A stretch of DNA of 64,000 bases, taken from the IMG/VR virus record IMGVR_UViG_3300043786_000977, positions 62,001 through 126,000 of that record, one strand, 5' to 3'. Every line of letters begins with the position of its first letter. Position 1 is the first letter of the stretch. The position numbers were made by a program, and so were the translations under genes. Positions 11,011 to 61,269 of the stretch are shown here, in pieces. A model generated the notes under the pieces. It was not told the origin of the DNA and did not search any database. It was given only the letters and a program-made list of their open reading frames with translations.

Positions 11011-11315
11011 AAAAAGAAAAATGTCCCCCACACGAGATTGAACGTGTGCTGGTGTTGTCCACGGGGCACATATCAGAAGCAGACAGTAAACTGTTGGATG
11101 CAGGCACCATACCGTGTACCCGTTACGAGTATGGGTACCTGATTTATGTCGGTGAGCGCAAGGACTTACAGGAGGCGCGTGAACAACTCATCCCAACCGG
11201 TATAAGTGCAGCACTCTATTATCTGCTCCTGTTGACCGTGGATAAGAAATGCACCTGGTTGAAACTCGACCGTGATGGTCCTGTCCGGACTGACTTGCCT
11301 TTGTTTAATTGGTGA
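11007..11315 (+). CDS. DUF5983-like protein
   Basis: LSTGHI...YGY...LDRDG...LPLFNW. Confidence 0.65.
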   Translation: MKKEKCPPHEIERVLVLSTGHISEADSKLLDAGTIPCTRYEYGYLIYVGERKDLQEAREQLIPTGISAALYYLLLLTVDKKCTWLKLDRDGPVRTDLPLFNW

Positions 11316-56251: not shown

Positions 56252-56525
56252 TGCTGTGGAGGCATGGGCACAAGACAACGACACTACAGTAATGCTTATC
56301 GGTACTGATGATGATAATGTTGACTACGCTCCTGCGATAATCGGTGTCACACACGAACCCCGTATGGCAGTCGTGTACAGCATGTCCAAGTTGATTGCCT
56401 GCTTTATGCACGTAAATAAATGGTCGCACGAGACCGCGACGGAGTGGGTAGATTTCAACGTAGTCCGTTCTCTACCTTACTACGGCAACAACGGACCGAT
56501 ATTAGTGGAGGATCTGGATGTCTGA
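56244..56525 (+). CDS. Phage hypothetical protein
   Basis: AIIGV...VYS...EA.EW.DFN....PY.G..GP pattern. Confidence 0.7.
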   Translation: MIDAVEAWAQDNDTTVMLIGTDDDNVDYAPAIIGVTHEPRMAVVYSMSKLIACFMHVNKWSHETATEWVDFNVVRSLPYYGNNGPILVEDLDV

Positions 56526-57300
56526 TAACGAGTCACCACCTAACCATATCGCAGAAGCCGTTGCGAGGCTAATGCAAACACACGTAGCACTAACCAATGC
56601 CATAATAGGCACGGCAAACTGTTTGGCAGGTGGCCTGTTACAATTGCGCGCCCACGAACGTGGGATCGAAGGGCACGATGACATCGTTGTCATTATCAAA
56701 GATGAGTTGATGGCAACAGTGAAGACCATATATTCAGATGCCCTCGACTGCCTGACCAGTGGTGTGACGTCTAAAGATACGCAGGTCTTACAGGCGCAGT
56801 ACACGGCTATGTGTGCCGTACCTATACGGGACCGCCTGGTAGCAGTGGTTACCAGGTATAAACCTGCCTTCAAGAAATCTAAGGCTGTACCGGCGATTAT
56901 GGATGCGTACTTATATAATCTGGCACAGTCATTAGATTCAGATATCAAAGCTATCATGACCTTGTTCGCGGTGTCGCTCTACGCATCTGAAGTAGGTGCA
57001 ATCGAAAACGCAAAAGATTCACTACCCGAGATCGTGAAACAGAGCATTAATGACGGTATGCCGTATATCGAAGGCGAGATTGATAAGGTATTTGACCTGG
57101 TATCACCTGAGTTGGATGCCATTGCTCAACTCGAGCACCAGATGTTTGAACAACTCGTAGGCGACGGTATCTCCGAGTCAGATGCCTTGGTAACGATTCA
57201 TAAACAGACAGGCGATCGGGTACGCGCACTCTTGTTTGAAAACGGGGCGCCTGACAACGACGAGAGTGCCGGGACCATCAACATCAACGATACGGAATAA
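56518..57300 (+). CDS. Helical hypothetical protein
   Basis: GGAGG RBS. Confidence 0.6.
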   Translation: MSDNESPPNHIAEAVARLMQTHVALTNAIIGTANCLAGGLLQLRAHERGIEGHDDIVVIIKDELMATVKTIYSDALDCLTSGVTSKDTQVLQAQYTAMCAVPIRDRLVAVVTRYKPAFKKSKAVPAIMDAYLYNLAQSLDSDIKAIMTLFAVSLYASEVGAIENAKDSLPEIVKQSINDGMPYIEGEIDKVFDLVSPELDAIAQLEHQMFEQLVGDGISESDALVTIHKQTGDRVRALLFENGAPDNDESAGTININDTE

Positions 57301-57312
57301 CAGCAACAACGG

Positions 57313-57420
57313 CGCAGTGACATCGCGGGACAAAACAAGCACAAGTTCGACGTAACAGCGTGCAGGGGATTGGCGTCTCGATAACGATATCACTGCGACA
57401 TCCGAAAAACCCAATCCCCT
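57313..57420 (+). ncRNA. Candidate pseudoknotted RNA
   Basis: 57313-25/57385-97 (12 of 13 bp), 57326-31/57375-80, crossing 10-bp helix 57364-73/57411-20. Confidence 0.55.
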
Positions 57421-57427
57421 TCTATTT

Positions 57428-57458
57428 AAGGTCCTGGCAGTGATCCTGTCAGGACCTT
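57428..57458 (+). terminator. Stem-loop
   Basis: AAGGTCCTGGCAG-TGATC-CTGTCAGGACCTT followed by CTTACTTT. Confidence 0.65.
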
Positions 57459-57476
57459 CTTACTTTGGGAGACATT

Positions 57477-57650
57477 ATGGCTATCAAAGTCAAAAAATTG
57501 AGAAAGTGGCTGGATTCACTTAACGGAAAAAAAGTAGCTATCAACGAAGATGGATCATGTCTTGTTGAGCTCAACACCAATGATGCACAAACAGACGCTT
57601 ATCTGGAAGTAGGCGGTATTCCAGATACCGAGGAGGATGAAGATGCCTAA
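57477..57650 (+). CDS. Small hypothetical protein
   Basis: GGGAG RBS. Confidence 0.55.
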   Translation: MAIKVKKLRKWLDSLNGKKVAINEDGSCLVELNTNDAQTDAYLEVGGIPDTEEDEDA

Positions 57651-57897
57651 GATTCATATAGGTTACGTTATTGTATGTCGTGGTTACCCACCTGACAGTA
57701 ATCCCTACAAGGGTAGTTCTGCAGGTCTGTCATTGTTAGGGCAAGAACGTCGGCTAGCTTTGCGCGGGTTTATGAATGGGGATGCAACAGAAGATTATAC
57801 ATTCTGGTATGCCCCCTGTCACGGTGGTGCGCGCTTATGTACCCGGGATGAAGTTAACTGGGATGCGAGCGATCTTAAATTAAAAGACAAGGAATAA
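57643..57897 (+). CDS. Hypothetical protein
   Basis: GAGGAGG RBS. Confidence 0.55.
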   Translation: MPKIHIGYVIVCRGYPPDSNPYKGSSAGLSLLGQERRLALRGFMNGDATEDYTFWYAPCHGGARLCTRDEVNWDASDLKLKDKE

Positions 57898-57911
57898 GGG
57901 AGAAACTAAAC

Positions 57912-58277
57912 ATGCGAAAAGCGTGTCTTGAATGTGTGTACAAACACTTAGGTGATGCAGCCATATGGGAGATCGAATATCACCTAGGGTATCCGGGATT
58001 CAAACTCTACATCGTCGGAAGTCTGAATCACGCCTCACACGAGGCATATGCAGCGAATAAGGAACTAGCATGGTTACTACGTGAACATCGCATTAACTGG
58101 TGGGCGGACCCTAACAACTACCGTGTACCCTACGAGGCCTTAGCTGCGTATGTGGCCATCTGCCTACAGGTACCTGAAGGTGACGCCATGCCGGGACTAC
58201 CCGAGGACTGTGTTGCTGGAATAGCACCTACTATGAGCGGCCGGATTGTCTATAGTATGGACACACGTCCTGACTAA
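57912..58277 (+). CDS. Hypothetical protein with N-terminal CxxC...H motif
   Basis: MRKACLECVYKHL; GGGAG RBS. Confidence 0.65.
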   Translation: MRKACLECVYKHLGDAAIWEIEYHLGYPGFKLYIVGSLNHASHEAYAANKELAWLLREHRINWWADPNNYRVPYEALAAYVAICLQVPEGDAMPGLPEDCVAGIAPTMSGRIVYSMDTRPD

Positions 58278-58420
58278 ATAATGACACCCTACACGTTATA
58301 ACAAATGTGTCGGGATTGGTTTACTTTCTGTCGCGGTAAGGAGCCGTGACGTAGAAGTAGATCATACCCGGTGTAAATTGTATTTAGCGTCTAGAGGGCG
58401 CTACAAAGGAGAACGGCAGT

Positions 58421-59467
58421 ATGGCAAGTATAATGAATGAAGCATTGTCGGAAGCTCTCCAAATCGCTGCGGCTGAAGGTCGGAAACTCCGCCTCCCGCC
58501 AGCAGTCAAGGTGGTCGAACGCCCACCAGAAGAAGATCACCGCCTGGTCCTCGCCATGGTGCGCACGCACCGCAAGGCCCACTTACGCGGCCAGATGACC
58601 ATCAGTGCCCGGGAACGGGTATCAGGTGACATTATCCTCGGGCCGTACAGCAATCGGCGGGAGACCCCGACGGAAGAGGGGCTGGACCTGCTTATGCAGG
58701 CGCACCGCTGGGTACTCAATCCCATTCACATGGGTGACGGTAACCGGCGCCCCCTGTACACGATTGTCGGGCCGCCAACCATCACTTTGATGCATCGTAT
58801 CGAGACGCATTGCGATGAGACCGGCTGCGGGAACACGGACCGGGAGTGGAAAGACATCGTCATCATGCGTTCGAGGGATGAGTCAAATCCTCATGAACGT
58901 GTCAATGGCTGGTCACCTGACCTGTATACGCCCTGCAAAAAGTGTGGAAGGCCCGTAAGCCAGCGGAAACTGTGGTGCACGGCGATTCGTAGCCGGCCGG
59001 ACAGTCAGGACGATCCCGTCGTTTTAGAGAAGGATGCGGCGGCCGTCACACGCACATTCCTGGAAGCCTGGAAGCAAGGGCCTCCAGCAGATGGTCAGCC
59101 CACCCTAGGCCTACCTCGGATCTGGGCTGTGTATCGTAAGGACGATGTGCCTGATCAGAGCTGGCAACCATCGGACGCACGGGCGGCCGCTTTGGTTGAG
59201 AAGGCTGCCACGTTCCAGAAGAAGATCGAAAACGGTGGCGTGGTGTCGTATCAGTCATACCCACTCGGTATACTGCCGTATGCTGTCGCCAAACAGTTCC
59301 ATCAAGCGCCCGAGCCTCAATCGAAAGAGATTCGGGAGTGGTGGCTGGAAAACGATACGGCAAGCATCGGATGGGTTCGGCGCTCTGACCTCTTCCCGAA
59401 CGAGAACATGGGATGGCGCCGGCGTCTCTGGCACGACAACAGACAGACGACCGAACTGTTAGTCTGA
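58421..59467 (+). CDS. Hypothetical protein with Zn ribbon
   Basis: AAGGAG RBS; CDETGC...CKKC. Confidence 0.65.
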   Translation: MASIMNEALSEALQIAAAEGRKLRLPPAVKVVERPPEEDHRLVLAMVRTHRKAHLRGQMTISARERVSGDIILGPYSNRRETPTEEGLDLLMQAHRWVLNPIHMGDGNRRPLYTIVGPPTITLMHRIETHCDETGCGNTDREWKDIVIMRSRDESNPHERVNGWSPDLYTPCKKCGRPVSQRKLWCTAIRSRPDSQDDPVVLEKDAAAVTRTFLEAWKQGPPADGQPTLGLPRIWAVYRKDDVPDQSWQPSDARAAALVEKAATFQKKIENGGVVSYQSYPLGILPYAVAKQFHQAPEPQSKEIREWWLENDTASIGWVRRSDLFPNENMGWRRRLWHDNRQTTELLV

Positions 59468-60905: not shown

Positions 60906-60981
60906 AGTCGGGTAACTCAGCTGGGAGAGTGCCAGGTCTACACCCTGGATGTCGCAGGTTCAATCCCTGTCCCGACTACCA
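60906..60981 (+). tRNA. tRNA-Val(TAC), with C at position 33
   Basis: Acceptor AGTCGGG/CCCGACT, A73, encoded CCA; anticodon arm CCAGG-TCTACAC-CCTGG; T-arm GCAGG-TTCAATC-CCTGT. Confidence 0.9.
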
Positions 60982-61184: not shown

Positions 61185-61269
61185 TGCGGGGTGTCGAGAA
61201 GTTGGTATCTCAGCAGGCTCATAACCTGCCGCGTAAGCCTCGTGGGTTCAAGTCCCACCCCCGCAACCA
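61185..61269 (+). tRNA. tRNA-Met(CAT), initiator-like but atypical
   Basis: TGCGGGG/CCCCGCA-A-CCA; GCAGG-CTCATAA-CCTGC; GTGGG-TTCAAGT-CCCAC; 12-nt variable region. Confidence 0.88.

What the first reader, a model, noticed from the sequence alone, without database searches (positions are those of the whole stretch)
57313..57458. Intergenic pseudoknot RNA followed by a terminator-like hairpin
Seen: P1 CGCAGTGACATCG/CGATATCACTGCG with inner helices, and a perfect 10-bp helix AGGGGATTGG/CCAATCCCCT that crosses P1, joined by A-rich linkers. I cannot match it to a known riboswitch or ribozyme. The crossing order loosely recalls HDV-like ribozymes, but P1.1 and P4 are not evident. Inference: a novel small RNA, ribozyme, nuclease-blocking knot or antitoxin mimic.
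Basis: partly seen in the sequence, partly recalled or inferred. Interest (0 to 1): 0.6.

Follow-up and report, generated by a model that had tools for sequence, protein, structure and literature searches.

The report
Conserved pseudoknot RNA ending phage operon
A roughly 150-base stretch between two genes of an uncultured freshwater jumbo phage encodes a real, evolutionarily conserved knotted RNA fold that matches no described RNA family, sits directly in front of a transcription stop signal, and turns up sporadically in two unrelated phage groups; its job is not yet known.

Summary
At 57313-57458 (+ strand) an outer hairpin (P1 and P2) encloses a small hairpin (P3) and the 5' strand of a perfect 10-bp helix. 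That helix's 3' strand lies outside P1, giving an H-type pseudoknot. A U-rich stretch and a strong terminator hairpin follow.

It is not chance. I found the same architecture in six other sequences, which with the window make six independent lineages. The crossing helix has both-sided compensatory changes at 5 of 10 positions and P2 at 6 of 6. G-U pairs fit only the + strand.

No Rfam family matches any member. The strand order differs from HDV-like ribozymes. There are no tandem repeats, so it is not a ToxI-type antitoxin.

The module is single-copy and starts right after a stop codon with no room for a promoter of its own. It is absent from most close relatives. It also occurs in an unrelated ~65-kb phage group, always at a gene boundary where small accessory ORFs vary.

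The crossing helix is GC-clamped and followed by a U-rich tract, like a terminator stem. My best reading (about 0.36) is a cis-acting, scaffold-dependent terminator or attenuator that leaves a compact 3'-terminal RNA. A trans-acting decoy RNA is nearly as likely. No expression data exist.

The parts
57313..57325 (+). P1, 5' strand (CGCAGTGACATCG)
   Evidence: Pairs with 57385-57397, 12 of 13 standard pairs. Recovered by constrained folding in all members. The helix is present with different sequences in L108, L004, L006, L013 and L193.
57326..57331 (+). P2, 5' strand (CGGGAC)
   Evidence: Pairs with 57375-57380. 32 of 36 cells are standard pairs, and all 6 positions show a both-sided change across six sequences.
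57332..57338 (+). A-rich joining strand J2/3 (AAAACAA)
   Evidence: A-rich in all members. It differs from the strain variant X11 only by a 1-nt deletion at 57332.
57339..57363 (+). P3 hairpin (GCAC ... GTGC) with a variable loop, abutting the crossing helix
   Evidence: 22 of 24 cells paired, with one compensatory change (C-G to U-A in L004). The 3' strand GYRC followed by A is conserved in all members.
57364..57373 (+). Crossing (pseudoknot) helix, 5' strand (AGGGGATTGG)
   Evidence: Perfect 10 bp with 57411-57420. 58 of 60 cells paired, and 5 of 10 positions show both-sided changes. Tool count: 98% paired, covariation score 0.32 against 0.158 shuffled, 0 of 500 shuffles as high.
57375..57380 (+). 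P2, 3' strand (GTCTCG)
   Evidence: The G57328-U57378 wobble would be C-A on the other strand, so the fold belongs to the + strand.
57385..57397 (+). P1, 3' strand (CGATATCACTGCG)
   Evidence: In L002, A57389>G repairs the C-A mismatch, C57391>T keeps a G-U pair, and G57397>T opens the terminal pair.
57398..57410 (+). A-rich loop L3 (ACATCCGAAAAAC); it carries an extra hairpin in L004, L006, L013 and L193
57411..57420 (+). Crossing helix, 3' strand (CCAATCCCCT)
57421..57427 (+). U-rich tract directly after the crossing helix (TCTATTT)
   Evidence: A U-rich tract follows the CCCC(U) end in all seven members. In L013 (U7) and L193 it is the only terminator-like tail.
57428..57458 (+). Canonical intrinsic-terminator hairpin (12 bp, loop GTGATCC)
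   Evidence: Found by the terminator scan. In L002, C57438>T and T57449>C both keep pairing. A hairpin of unrelated sequence occupies the same place in L108, L004 and L006.
57459..57466 (+). U-rich tail of the terminator (CTTACTTT)
57467..57479 (+). Ribosome-binding site GGGAGA and ATG (57477) of the first downstream small ORF. It is only 8 nt after the tail, so this ORF depends on read-through.
   Evidence: No sigma-70-like promoter on the + strand in 56900-58500.

Best explanation
The stretch encodes a self-contained RNA module that is read as the tail of the upstream operon's transcript.

Shown:
- The RNA folds into an H-type pseudoknot. P1 and P2 stack into one hairpin whose loop holds an A-rich strand, the small hairpin P3 and the 5' strand of the crossing helix. 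The 3' strand follows after an A-rich loop.
- The fold is conserved by compensatory changes in six independent lineages.
- It is specific to the + strand and single-copy in each genome.
- It begins 0 to 28 nt after a stop codon (inside the stop codon in L193).
- It is followed within 10 nt by a termination signal.

Inferred:
- The crossing helix is itself built as an intrinsic-terminator stem. It has an invariant GGGG/CCCC clamp at its base, directly followed by a U-rich tract.
- Its 37- to 62-nt 'loop' is tied down by P1/P2, so closure of this stem, and hence termination, depends on the upstream scaffold being folded.
- In five of seven members a plain GC hairpin with a U tail backs it up. 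In L013 and L193 the knot plus U tract stands alone.
- The module therefore works in cis. It punctuates transcription at a gene boundary, limits how much RNA polymerase passes into the downstream genes (which have no promoter of their own), and leaves a compact 3'-terminal knot on the upstream message.
- Conservation goes beyond what a terminator needs (junction GYRCA-GGGG, A-rich strands, near-identity between strains). This suggests that a factor (protein, RNA polymerase or a small molecule) reads the junction and tunes termination.
For: - Anatomy.
- Covariation: the crossing helix has 58 of 60 cells paired with 5 of 10 positions compensatory, and P2 has 6 of 6 positions compensatory. The independent tool count on a MAFFT alignment gave 98% paired and 0 of 500 shuffles reaching the covariation score, with slid partners dropping to 24-68% paired.
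- Constrained folding recovers P1 and P2 in every member, and P3 in all but L002, whose minimum-energy fold replaces it with a different small hairpin.
- Substitutions between the window and L002 inside helices keep or restore pairing, except at two terminal pairs.
- The element is more conserved than its flanks.
- All seven members carry a U-rich tract right after the CCCC end. L013 and L193 have no other terminator.
- There is no promoter-like site and no room for one between the stop codon and P1. The downstream RBS starts 8 nt after the terminator tail.
- Relatives without the module have the two flanking genes abutting or overlapping.
- Precedent that RNA structure next to a terminator changes termination: bioRxiv 10.64898/2026.06.17.733018.
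Against: - No transcript data exist. Neither termination at the knot's U tract nor any regulation is shown.
- A 10-bp stem with a 37- to 62-nt structured loop is not a standard terminator.
- I found no alternative, mutually exclusive pairing of the kind riboswitches and attenuators usually have. This rests on inspection of the sequences only.
- The downstream genes differ between carriers and are absent in L002, so there is no regulated gene set that would point to a signal.
- The module occurs sporadically in two unrelated phage groups. That fits an autonomous RNA with a function of its own at least as well as a cis regulator.
- Only seven sequences are known. Apart from the crossing helix, the helix alignment is manual.
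Confidence: 0.36

Rival explanations
1. A stable non-coding RNA that acts in trans. The knot is released as the 3'-terminal piece of the operon transcript (5' end made by processing, 3' end at its own terminator). It works through its fold by binding and titrating a host or phage protein, for example a nuclease, a defence component or an RNA chaperone. The terminator is part of the module because the RNA needs its own 3' end.
For: - The module, and not its neighbours, is what is conserved. Flanking genes differ between carriers.
- L002 keeps the element plus terminator without any accessory ORF.
- The same architecture sits in an unrelated ~65-kb phage group, whose 27 other distinct relatives examined lack it.
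- Near-identity between strains extends to loops.
- A U-rich stretch, then a hairpin, then a U tail matches the known Hfq-binding module of bacterial small RNAs (my own knowledge, Ishikawa et al. 2012; not tested).
- It lies in a spot where small accessory ORFs turn over, as anti-defence loci do.
Against: - It has no promoter of its own.
- No long conserved single-stranded seed is visible.
- There is no expression or processing evidence.
- No partner protein co-occurs that I could identify. Neighbouring proteins have no family matches.
Confidence: 0.28
2. A cis-acting antiterminator. The folded knot, just upstream of the terminator hairpin, suppresses termination. It could do so sterically in the RNA exit channel ('tug-of-war') or by binding RNA polymerase as the HK022 put, Tn916 canT or Bacillus EAR RNAs do. 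Polymerases that have transcribed it would then read into the downstream genes.
For: - A stable pseudoknot lies upstream of an intrinsic terminator with no sequence overlap.
- Downstream genes need read-through.
- Pseudoknots placed in front of terminators lower termination.
- put and canT are cis-acting RNAs of mobile elements that lie upstream of terminators.
Against: - The spacer between knot and hairpin is 6-9 nt, whereas the tug-of-war effect needs about 0-4 nt and fades with longer spacers.
- In L013 and L193 there is no separate hairpin to suppress, and the knot's own helix plus U tract is the terminator-like signal.
- An unconditional antiterminator fused to its own terminator has no obvious use.
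- put is two stem-loops with a triplex, not this fold.
Confidence: 0.1
3. A passive structure: an elaborate terminator and 3'-end stabiliser that protects the upstream message from 3' exonucleases, with no regulation and no partner.
For: It sits at the end of a long co-directional gene array and has two termination signals in tandem. The compact knot would resist exonucleases.
Against: - A plain hairpin does this job, as in the relative L184.
- This reading does not explain conservation of three extra helices, of the junction sequence and of loop sequence between strains.
- It does not explain spread of the module to an unrelated phage group.
Confidence: 0.1
4. A self-cleaving ribozyme of a new class that cuts the polycistronic RNA at this gene boundary.
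For: It is small and pseudoknotted. It is sporadically distributed in intergenic regions of phage operons, as hammerhead, twister, pistol and hatchet ribozymes are (my own knowledge). The helix order differs from HDV-like ribozymes by only one swap.
Against: - No known ribozyme model matches at E up to 10.
- Apart from the CA before the G run, I see no strictly conserved unpaired nucleotides that would mark an active site in seven sequences.
- The tight link to a terminator and U-rich tract is not a ribozyme feature.
Confidence: 0.08
5. No RNA function: a chance fold, or a DNA-level site (recombination or insertion scar, protein-binding site).
For: A 9-nt direct repeat, ACGGAATAA, flanks element plus terminator in L002, so the unit was probably inserted as DNA.
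Against: Compensatory changes keep four helices in six lineages. G-U pairs work on one strand only. Strain-level conservation exceeds that of coding flanks.
Confidence: 0.03

Closest known systems
Pseudoknot riboswitches with a terminator platform (ZTP, fluoride, preQ1-I), including the 'tug-of-war' layout (bioRxiv 10.64898/2026.06.17.733018)
   Same: An H-type pseudoknot whose 3' strand lies just upstream of an intrinsic terminator, with genes downstream that depend on read-through. As in the tug-of-war layout, there is no sequence overlap between fold and terminator.
   Different: - No Rfam riboswitch model matches.
- The spacer is 6-9 nt and U-rich instead of 0-4 nt.
- It lies after a gene inside an operon, not in a 5' leader behind a promoter.
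- Downstream genes are unrelated between carriers, so no ligand can be inferred.
- In two members the crossing helix itself is the terminator-like stem.
Cis-acting processive antiterminator RNAs of mobile elements: HK022 putL/putR, Tn916 canT, Bacillus EAR
   Same: A structured RNA encoded by a phage or mobile element, transcribed in the sense direction inside an operon, lying upstream of terminators, with no protein-coding role.
   Different: put is about 70 nt with two stem-loops and a triplex, not a pseudoknot of this order. Those RNAs act on distant terminators, whereas here the terminator is fused to the fold. No sequence relation was detected, and activity is untested.
Intrinsic (Rho-independent) terminators
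   Same: A GC-rich stem base followed at once by a U-rich tract, both for the plain hairpin 57428-57466 and for the crossing helix 57364-57373/57411-57427.
   Different: The crossing helix has a 37- to 62-nt 'loop' that is itself paired to upstream sequence, which makes a pseudoknot. It also has three further conserved helices that no ordinary terminator has.
HDV-like self-cleaving ribozymes
   Same: An outer helix encloses a hairpin and one strand of a second helix. The partner of that second helix lies 3' of the outer helix, after an optional hairpin.
   Different: The 5' strand of the crossing helix follows the inner hairpin instead of preceding it. There is no P1.1, no conserved cytosine before the last strand, and no model hit. 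Cleavage is untested.
Type III antitoxin RNAs (ToxI, and pseudo-ToxI of phages)
   Same: A pseudoknot-forming RNA, then a terminator, then an ORF. Phage-borne versions are known.
   Different: ToxI-type RNAs are tandem repeats of about 36 nt processed by the toxin. Here there is one copy and no repeats. The downstream ORFs vary, are short, have no toxin family match, and are absent in L002.
3'-UTR-derived small RNAs of bacteria and phages
   Same: No promoter of its own, shares the terminator of the upstream operon, has a U-rich stretch before the terminal hairpin and a U tail.
   Different: No conserved single-stranded seed. The conserved part is a compact pseudoknot. Processing and Hfq binding are untested, and the host is unknown.

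Membership tests
Any Rfam 15 family | Score at or above the family's gathering threshold | tested here: not met
   - Window at gathering threshold: only two tRNAs.
- 57200-57560 at E up to 10: four hits, all far below their thresholds (best 16.4 bits against 34).
- Five other carriers' loci at E up to 10: nothing on the element except one 23.5-bit hit (threshold 50) on L006's terminator.
HDV-like ribozyme | Nested double pseudoknot with strand order P1-P2-P3-P3'-P1'-P4-P4'-P2' | tested here: not met
   The order here is P1-P2-P3-P3'-PK-P2'-P1'-(hairpin)-PK'. The crossing helix's 5' strand comes after the inner hairpin.
HDV-like ribozyme | P1.1 and a conserved catalytic cytosine in J4/2 | tested here: not met
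   The nucleotides before the 3' strand of the crossing helix differ in all members (AAAAAC, UAUAAAG, CAUCAAU, UAACAAU, AUCGGUC, GCUUUU). No two-pair P1.1 is evident.
HDV-like ribozyme or any self-cleaving ribozyme | Site-specific self-cleavage | not testable with these tools
   Needs a transcription and cleavage assay.
Type III antitoxin (ToxI-like) | Tandem array of about 34-36-nt repeats | tested here: not met
   Tandem Repeats Finder gives 0 rows on 57100-57700 at minimum score 30. The element is single-copy in the genome.
Type III antitoxin (ToxI-like) | Cognate endoribonuclease toxin gene (ToxN/AbiQ-like) directly downstream | tested here: not met
   The downstream ORFs (57 and 86 aa) have no Pfam or PHROG match. 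They are unrelated to the ORFs downstream of other carriers and are missing in L002.
Intrinsic terminator | GC-rich hairpin followed by a U-rich tract | tested here: met
   57428-57458 plus tail was found by the scan, with 13 pairs by its own count. The crossing helix also ends in CCCC(U) followed by a U-rich tract in all seven members, but its loop is far longer than the scan allows.
Riboswitch or attenuator with a terminator platform | Conserved structured domain upstream of a terminator, in the sense orientation, before genes that lack their own promoter | tested here: met
Riboswitch or attenuator with a terminator platform | Mutually exclusive alternative pairing (antiterminator), or a spacer of at most about 4 nt (tug-of-war) | tested here: not met
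   By inspection of seven members, no conserved alternative partner exists for either strand of the crossing helix or for the terminator arms. The spacers are 6, 7, 7, 9 and 9 nt, against 0-4 nt in the tug-of-war paper.
Riboswitch | Consistent association with genes of one pathway; ligand binding | tested here: not met
   Downstream genes are unrelated between carriers. Ligand binding cannot be tested here.
HK022 put-type antiterminator RNA | Two stem-loops of about 70 nt that bind RNA polymerase and give terminator read-through | tested here: inconclusive
   The fold differs. Polymerase binding and read-through cannot be tested with these tools.
New motif proposed here (knot plus terminator module) | P1-P2 hairpin whose loop holds P3 and AGGGG(N4-5), which pairs with (N4-5)CCCCU placed 3' of P1 and followed by a U-rich tract; located after a stop codon, co-directional | tested here: met
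   Met by the window, L002/L003, L108, L004, L006, L013/L014/L015 and L193. L329 is doubtful. L114, L119 and L309 are nested long-loop hairpins and are not counted.

The most novel reading that the evidence does not exclude
The knot is a mobile, autonomous functional RNA of phages, of a class not yet described. It could be a decoy that disarms a host nuclease or defence system. It could be a sensor that opens the downstream accessory (possibly anti-defence) genes only when a host signal appears. Or it could be a new self-cleaving ribozyme class. Its sporadic presence in two unrelated phage groups, always at a boundary where small accessory genes turn over, would then reflect selection on the RNA itself.
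Probability: 0.2. Interest if true: 0.8.

Novelty: new variant of a known kind. Interest (0 to 1): 0.55.

Why it matters
Structured RNAs of uncultured phages are barely charted. This one has unusually good comparative support for so few sequences and matches no described family. It also joins two things usually seen apart: a pseudoknot domain, and a terminator stem formed by the pseudoknot's own last helix.

If the scaffold controls closure of that stem, this would be a compact natural design for conditional termination without the usual overlapping antiterminator. That bears on how nascent RNA structure steers RNA polymerase.

If the RNA instead acts on its own, as a decoy, sensor or ribozyme, it would be a new kind of mobile RNA cargo in phage accessory-gene hotspots. 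It would also be a handle on what those hotspots do.

Either way it gives a defined 110-160-nt construct that can be tested in vitro without culturing the phage.

Tried and rejected
**Searches for relatives**
- Nucleotide and protein searches of GenBank phages found no relative. Near and distant BLAST of 56500-58300 gave nothing, the 260-aa neighbour gave nothing, and the DNA polymerase reaches only about 25% identity.
- Single-protein scans of IMG/VR with the two neighbouring proteins and the polymerase found nothing.
- The strict pattern CAGGGGNNNGGCG...CCNNNCCCCNTYTA gave 0 hits in IMG/VR.
- The same pattern gave 62 hits in 185,579 prokaryote genomes, about the number I estimated for chance. 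Seven pass a complementarity filter, all in GC-rich bacterial DNA without the architecture.
- The pattern TGCAGGGG...CCCCTTNTNTT gave 64 IMG/VR hits. Only L329 is a doubtful variant and L309 is a plain long hairpin.
- L191/L192, from the TGCAAGGGGG pattern, lie in a short ORF and were rejected.

**Covariance models**
- Models R1 and R2 found L108 but are too close to the window's sequence to score L006, L013 or L193, and they misalign L004's extra hairpin.
- I did not build a third model.

**Alignments**
- MAFFT misplaces the C and G runs of L013, L193 and L108 by one column, and P1's 3' strand in L004 and L006.
- The tool-based pair count therefore covers only five rows and the crossing helix. 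The rest rests on my manual alignment, checked by constrained folding.

**Other checks**
- K-mer enrichment in the genome's intergenic regions gave no promoter motif. The top word, GCAGTGA, merely occurs twice in the element.
- Pairing of the CCCC run with the downstream Shine-Dalgarno sequence appears in the minimum-energy fold. I dismissed it as the trivial complementarity of a C run to any G-rich ribosome-binding site.
- Ribosome-coupled control was considered and dropped, because the distance from stop codon to P1 varies from overlapping the stop codon to 28 nt.
- RNase III processing was considered and dropped, because P1 plus P2 is only 8-11 bp in L013 and L006.
- RNA evidence: no public run on record as RNA holds the stretch, and only DNA contigs could be laid.

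Full report
**Setting**

The window is bases 62001-126000 of a 208,908-bp IMG/VR virus record with direct terminal repeats. It comes from a jumbo phage of freshwater and lake metagenomes. Nearly all genes are on the + strand.

GenBank phages hold no near relative. The region gives no BLAST match, and the DNA polymerase is only about 25% identical to its best matches.

The finding lies in the 164-nt gap between a 260-aa ORF (56518-57300) and a pair of small ORFs (57477-57650 and 57637-57897). A conserved 121-aa ORF (57912-58277) follows these.

**The observation**

- P1 is 57313-57325 with 57385-57397, 12 of 13 standard pairs.
- Inside it, P2 is 57326-57331 with 57375-57380, and the small hairpin P3 is 57339-57342 with 57360-57363.
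- The perfect 10-bp helix 57364-57373 with 57411-57420 crosses P1/P2.
- The linkers AAAACAA and ACATCCGAAAAAC are A-rich.
- A 12-bp hairpin (57428-57458) with a U-rich tail is the only + strand terminator-like site in 56900-58500.
- The nested part alone folds with z = -3.9 against shuffles.

**Relatives**

The upstream protein has one homologue cluster, at 73% identity. Its contigs, L002 and L003, are 84.6% identical to the window over 6.3 kb.
- The element there is 94.2% identical, and its first 85 nt are 97.6% identical. Only about 2% of 85-nt windows are as conserved.
- In L002 the two small ORFs are missing and the terminator is followed directly by the 121-aa gene.

A well-conserved phosphoesterase gene 1.4 kb upstream served as an anchor to fetch more distant relatives.
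- L004 and L006 (76% identical anchor protein) and L013-L015 (61%) carry the element.
- A covariance model built from the window and L002 found it in L108.
- A sequence pattern found a seventh copy, L193, in an unrelated phage.

**Conserved architecture**

All seven sequences (six independent lineages) share the same order of parts:
- P1 (3-13 bp), then P2 (5-6 bp);
- an A-rich strand;
- P3 (stem GCAC/GUGC or a variant, with a variable loop);
- 0-4 nt, usually none or a single A, ending in a conserved CA;
- the crossing strand AGGGG plus 2-5 variable bases;
- a short linker (1-2 nt, 7 in L193), then P2' and P1';
- an A-rich loop, which in four members carries an extra hairpin;
- the complementary strand ending in CCCCU;
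- a U-rich tract.

Folding each sequence with the crossing strands blocked recovers P1 and P2 in every member. It recovers P3 in all but L002, whose minimum-energy fold puts a different small hairpin there.

**Covariation**

In my manual alignment of six sequences:
- the crossing helix has 58 of 60 standard pairs, and five of its ten positions change on both sides (A-U/G-C; U-A/C-G/A-U; U-A/C-G; G-C/C-G; G-C/A-U);
- P2 has 32 of 36 standard pairs, and all six positions change on both sides;
- P3 has one compensatory change.

Swapping 3' strands between sequences lowers pairing from 9.8 to 8.05 of 10 for the crossing helix, and from 5.2 to 3.05 of 6 for P2.

An independent count on a MAFFT alignment of five rows covers the crossing helix only.
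- 98% of cells are paired.
- Three pairs have both-sided change.
- The covariation score is 0.32 against 0.158 in shuffles, and 0 of 500 shuffles reach it.
- Pairing falls to 24-68% when partners are slid by one to three columns.

Between the window and L002, 11 substitutions fall in 57301-57462. Of the six inside helices:
- one repairs the P1 mismatch;
- three switch between G-C and G-U;
- two open terminal pairs.

The G-U pairs would be C-A on the other strand, so the fold belongs to the + strand RNA.

A strain variant in a sediment metagenome has 14 substitutions in 174 nt of the upstream gene. It has none in 57229-57402, only a 1-nt deletion in the A run.

**What it is not**

- No Rfam family matches the window's element or any other member.
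- The strand order differs from HDV-like ribozymes, and neither P1.1 nor a conserved cytosine before the last strand is seen.
- There are no tandem repeats, and the element is single-copy. The downstream ORFs match no family, differ between carriers and are absent in L002. A ToxI-type antitoxin is therefore excluded.

**Distribution**

- The module is absent from most close relatives. In L099, L007, L100, L101 and L186 the homologues of the two flanking genes abut or overlap, and L184 has only a plain hairpin.
- Its neighbours differ between carriers. Upstream is a 245-260-aa family in four carriers, a 170-aa protein in L108 and an 85-aa protein in L013. Downstream are unrelated small ORFs or none.
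- L193 belongs to another phage type, with HNH endonuclease and nucleotide kinase neighbours. The 27 distinct relatives of that phage that I examined, about 65 kb in the longest contigs, lack the module at the same boundary, where accessory ORFs vary.
- In L002 a 9-nt direct repeat, ACGGAATAA, flanks exactly the element plus terminator. Removing one repeat and the insert would give a normal stop-RBS-start junction.
- The unit therefore behaves as an insertable module. It is not bound to a particular gene.

**How it probably works**

Three anatomical facts guide the reading.
1. P1 begins 0-28 nt after the upstream stop codon, and inside it in L193. No sigma-70-like site is present, so the RNA is made by read-through from the upstream operon.
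2. The downstream ribosome-binding site starts 8 nt after the terminator tail, so downstream genes depend on read-through.
3. The invariant GGGG/CCCC block sits at the base of the crossing helix and is followed at once by a U-rich tract in all seven members (UUCUAUUU, AUUUGU, GUUUAUUAUUU, UUCUAAUUUU, UUUAUUCUA, U7). In L013 and L193 this is the only terminator-like signal.

The crossing helix thus looks like a terminator stem whose long loop is tied down by P1/P2. I therefore favour a cis-acting, scaffold-dependent terminator or attenuator that also leaves a knotted 3' end. Conservation beyond structure hints at a bound factor.

This step is inferred and has not been shown.

**Rivals**

- *Trans-acting RNA.* The module's independence from its neighbours and its spread between phage groups fit a trans-acting RNA almost as well.
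- *Antiterminator.* Work on 'tug-of-war' riboswitches shows that pseudoknots directly upstream of terminators can suppress termination, but only with spacers of about 0-4 nt. Here the spacers are 6-9 nt. Together with the two members that lack a separate hairpin, this speaks against the antiterminator reading.
- *put and canT.* These are functional precedents for cis-acting RNAs of mobile elements near terminators, but they have other folds.

**Limits**

- Only seven sequences are known.
- The alignment is partly manual.
- There are no RNA data.
- The host is unknown.
- All pattern scans together suggest that the motif is rare in the collections searched.

Noticed in passing
window 58278-58420: A second conserved structured intergenic region, upstream of the 348-aa ORF. 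It has a sigma-70-like promoter (CTAAATAA ... GTTATAAC) and then a leader that starts TCGGGATTGG. The leader has a long imperfect helix to GATCATACCCGG, an inner hairpin GTCGCGG/CCGTGAC, and a further hairpin before the RBS. Promoter and leader are conserved in L002, L006, L007, L099, L100 and L101, including relatives that lack the finding's element.
   Followed up: partly
window 57477-57897; L002 6942-6971: The two small ORFs (57 and 86 aa) after the terminator are an insertion or deletion relative to L002, where the terminator is followed directly by the 121-aa gene. GGAATAA ends both the 260-aa ORF (57294-57300) and the 86-aa ORF (57891-57897).
   Followed up: partly
L002 6775-6783 and 6949-6957: An exact 9-nt direct repeat, ACGGAATAA, flanks the element plus terminator. 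It looks like a target duplication or a microhomology junction left by insertion of the module.
   Followed up: partly
window 60906-60981 and 61185-61269: Two phage tRNA genes, tRNA-Val(TAC) and tRNA-Met(CAT), lie about 3.5 kb downstream of the element.
   Followed up: no
L108 12203-12581 and 11847-11918: The related phage contig that carries the element (IMGVR_UViG_3300035698_003862) encodes a full-length tmRNA (109.6 bits, E 4.5e-42) and a tRNA.
   Followed up: no
G000:C1:128920-129010 (outside the window): A TTGACT ... TATAAC promoter-like site is followed by the hairpin GGGGGGCCGGG ... CCCGGTCCCCC and a T tract. It has the same GGGG/CCCC-plus-U design as the crossing helix, but as a plain hairpin.
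   Followed up: no
L114 1258-1366 and L119 1221-1305: More distant relatives have, downstream of the phosphoesterase gene, a long-loop terminator-like structure AGGGGCGGGGCG ... CCTGCCCCTTTTTA with nested inner helices. Its ends resemble those of the crossing helix, but it is not a pseudoknot and was not counted as a member.
   Followed up: partly
L329, about 11674 on the - strand (IMGVR_UViG_3300044987_002388): A possible variant of the motif. AGGGGGGCC pairs with GGCCCCCCT and is followed by TTTATT, with an enclosing helix CGCTG/CAGCG. However, there is no linker before the 3' strand, so the pseudoknot is sterically doubtful.
   Followed up: partly
window 11015-11060, - strand: A weak covariance-model hit (10.3 bits, E 4.3) to the loop portion of the model (GGACAA..AGCACA..GUUC..GGGGA). 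It is probably chance.
   Followed up: no
L006 5212-5413: In this carrier, about 190 nt separate the terminator from the next gene. The stretch holds a second strong hairpin (AGCTGTTG ... CAACAGCT) and a possible 17-codon ORF behind a GGGGAG site.
   Followed up: no
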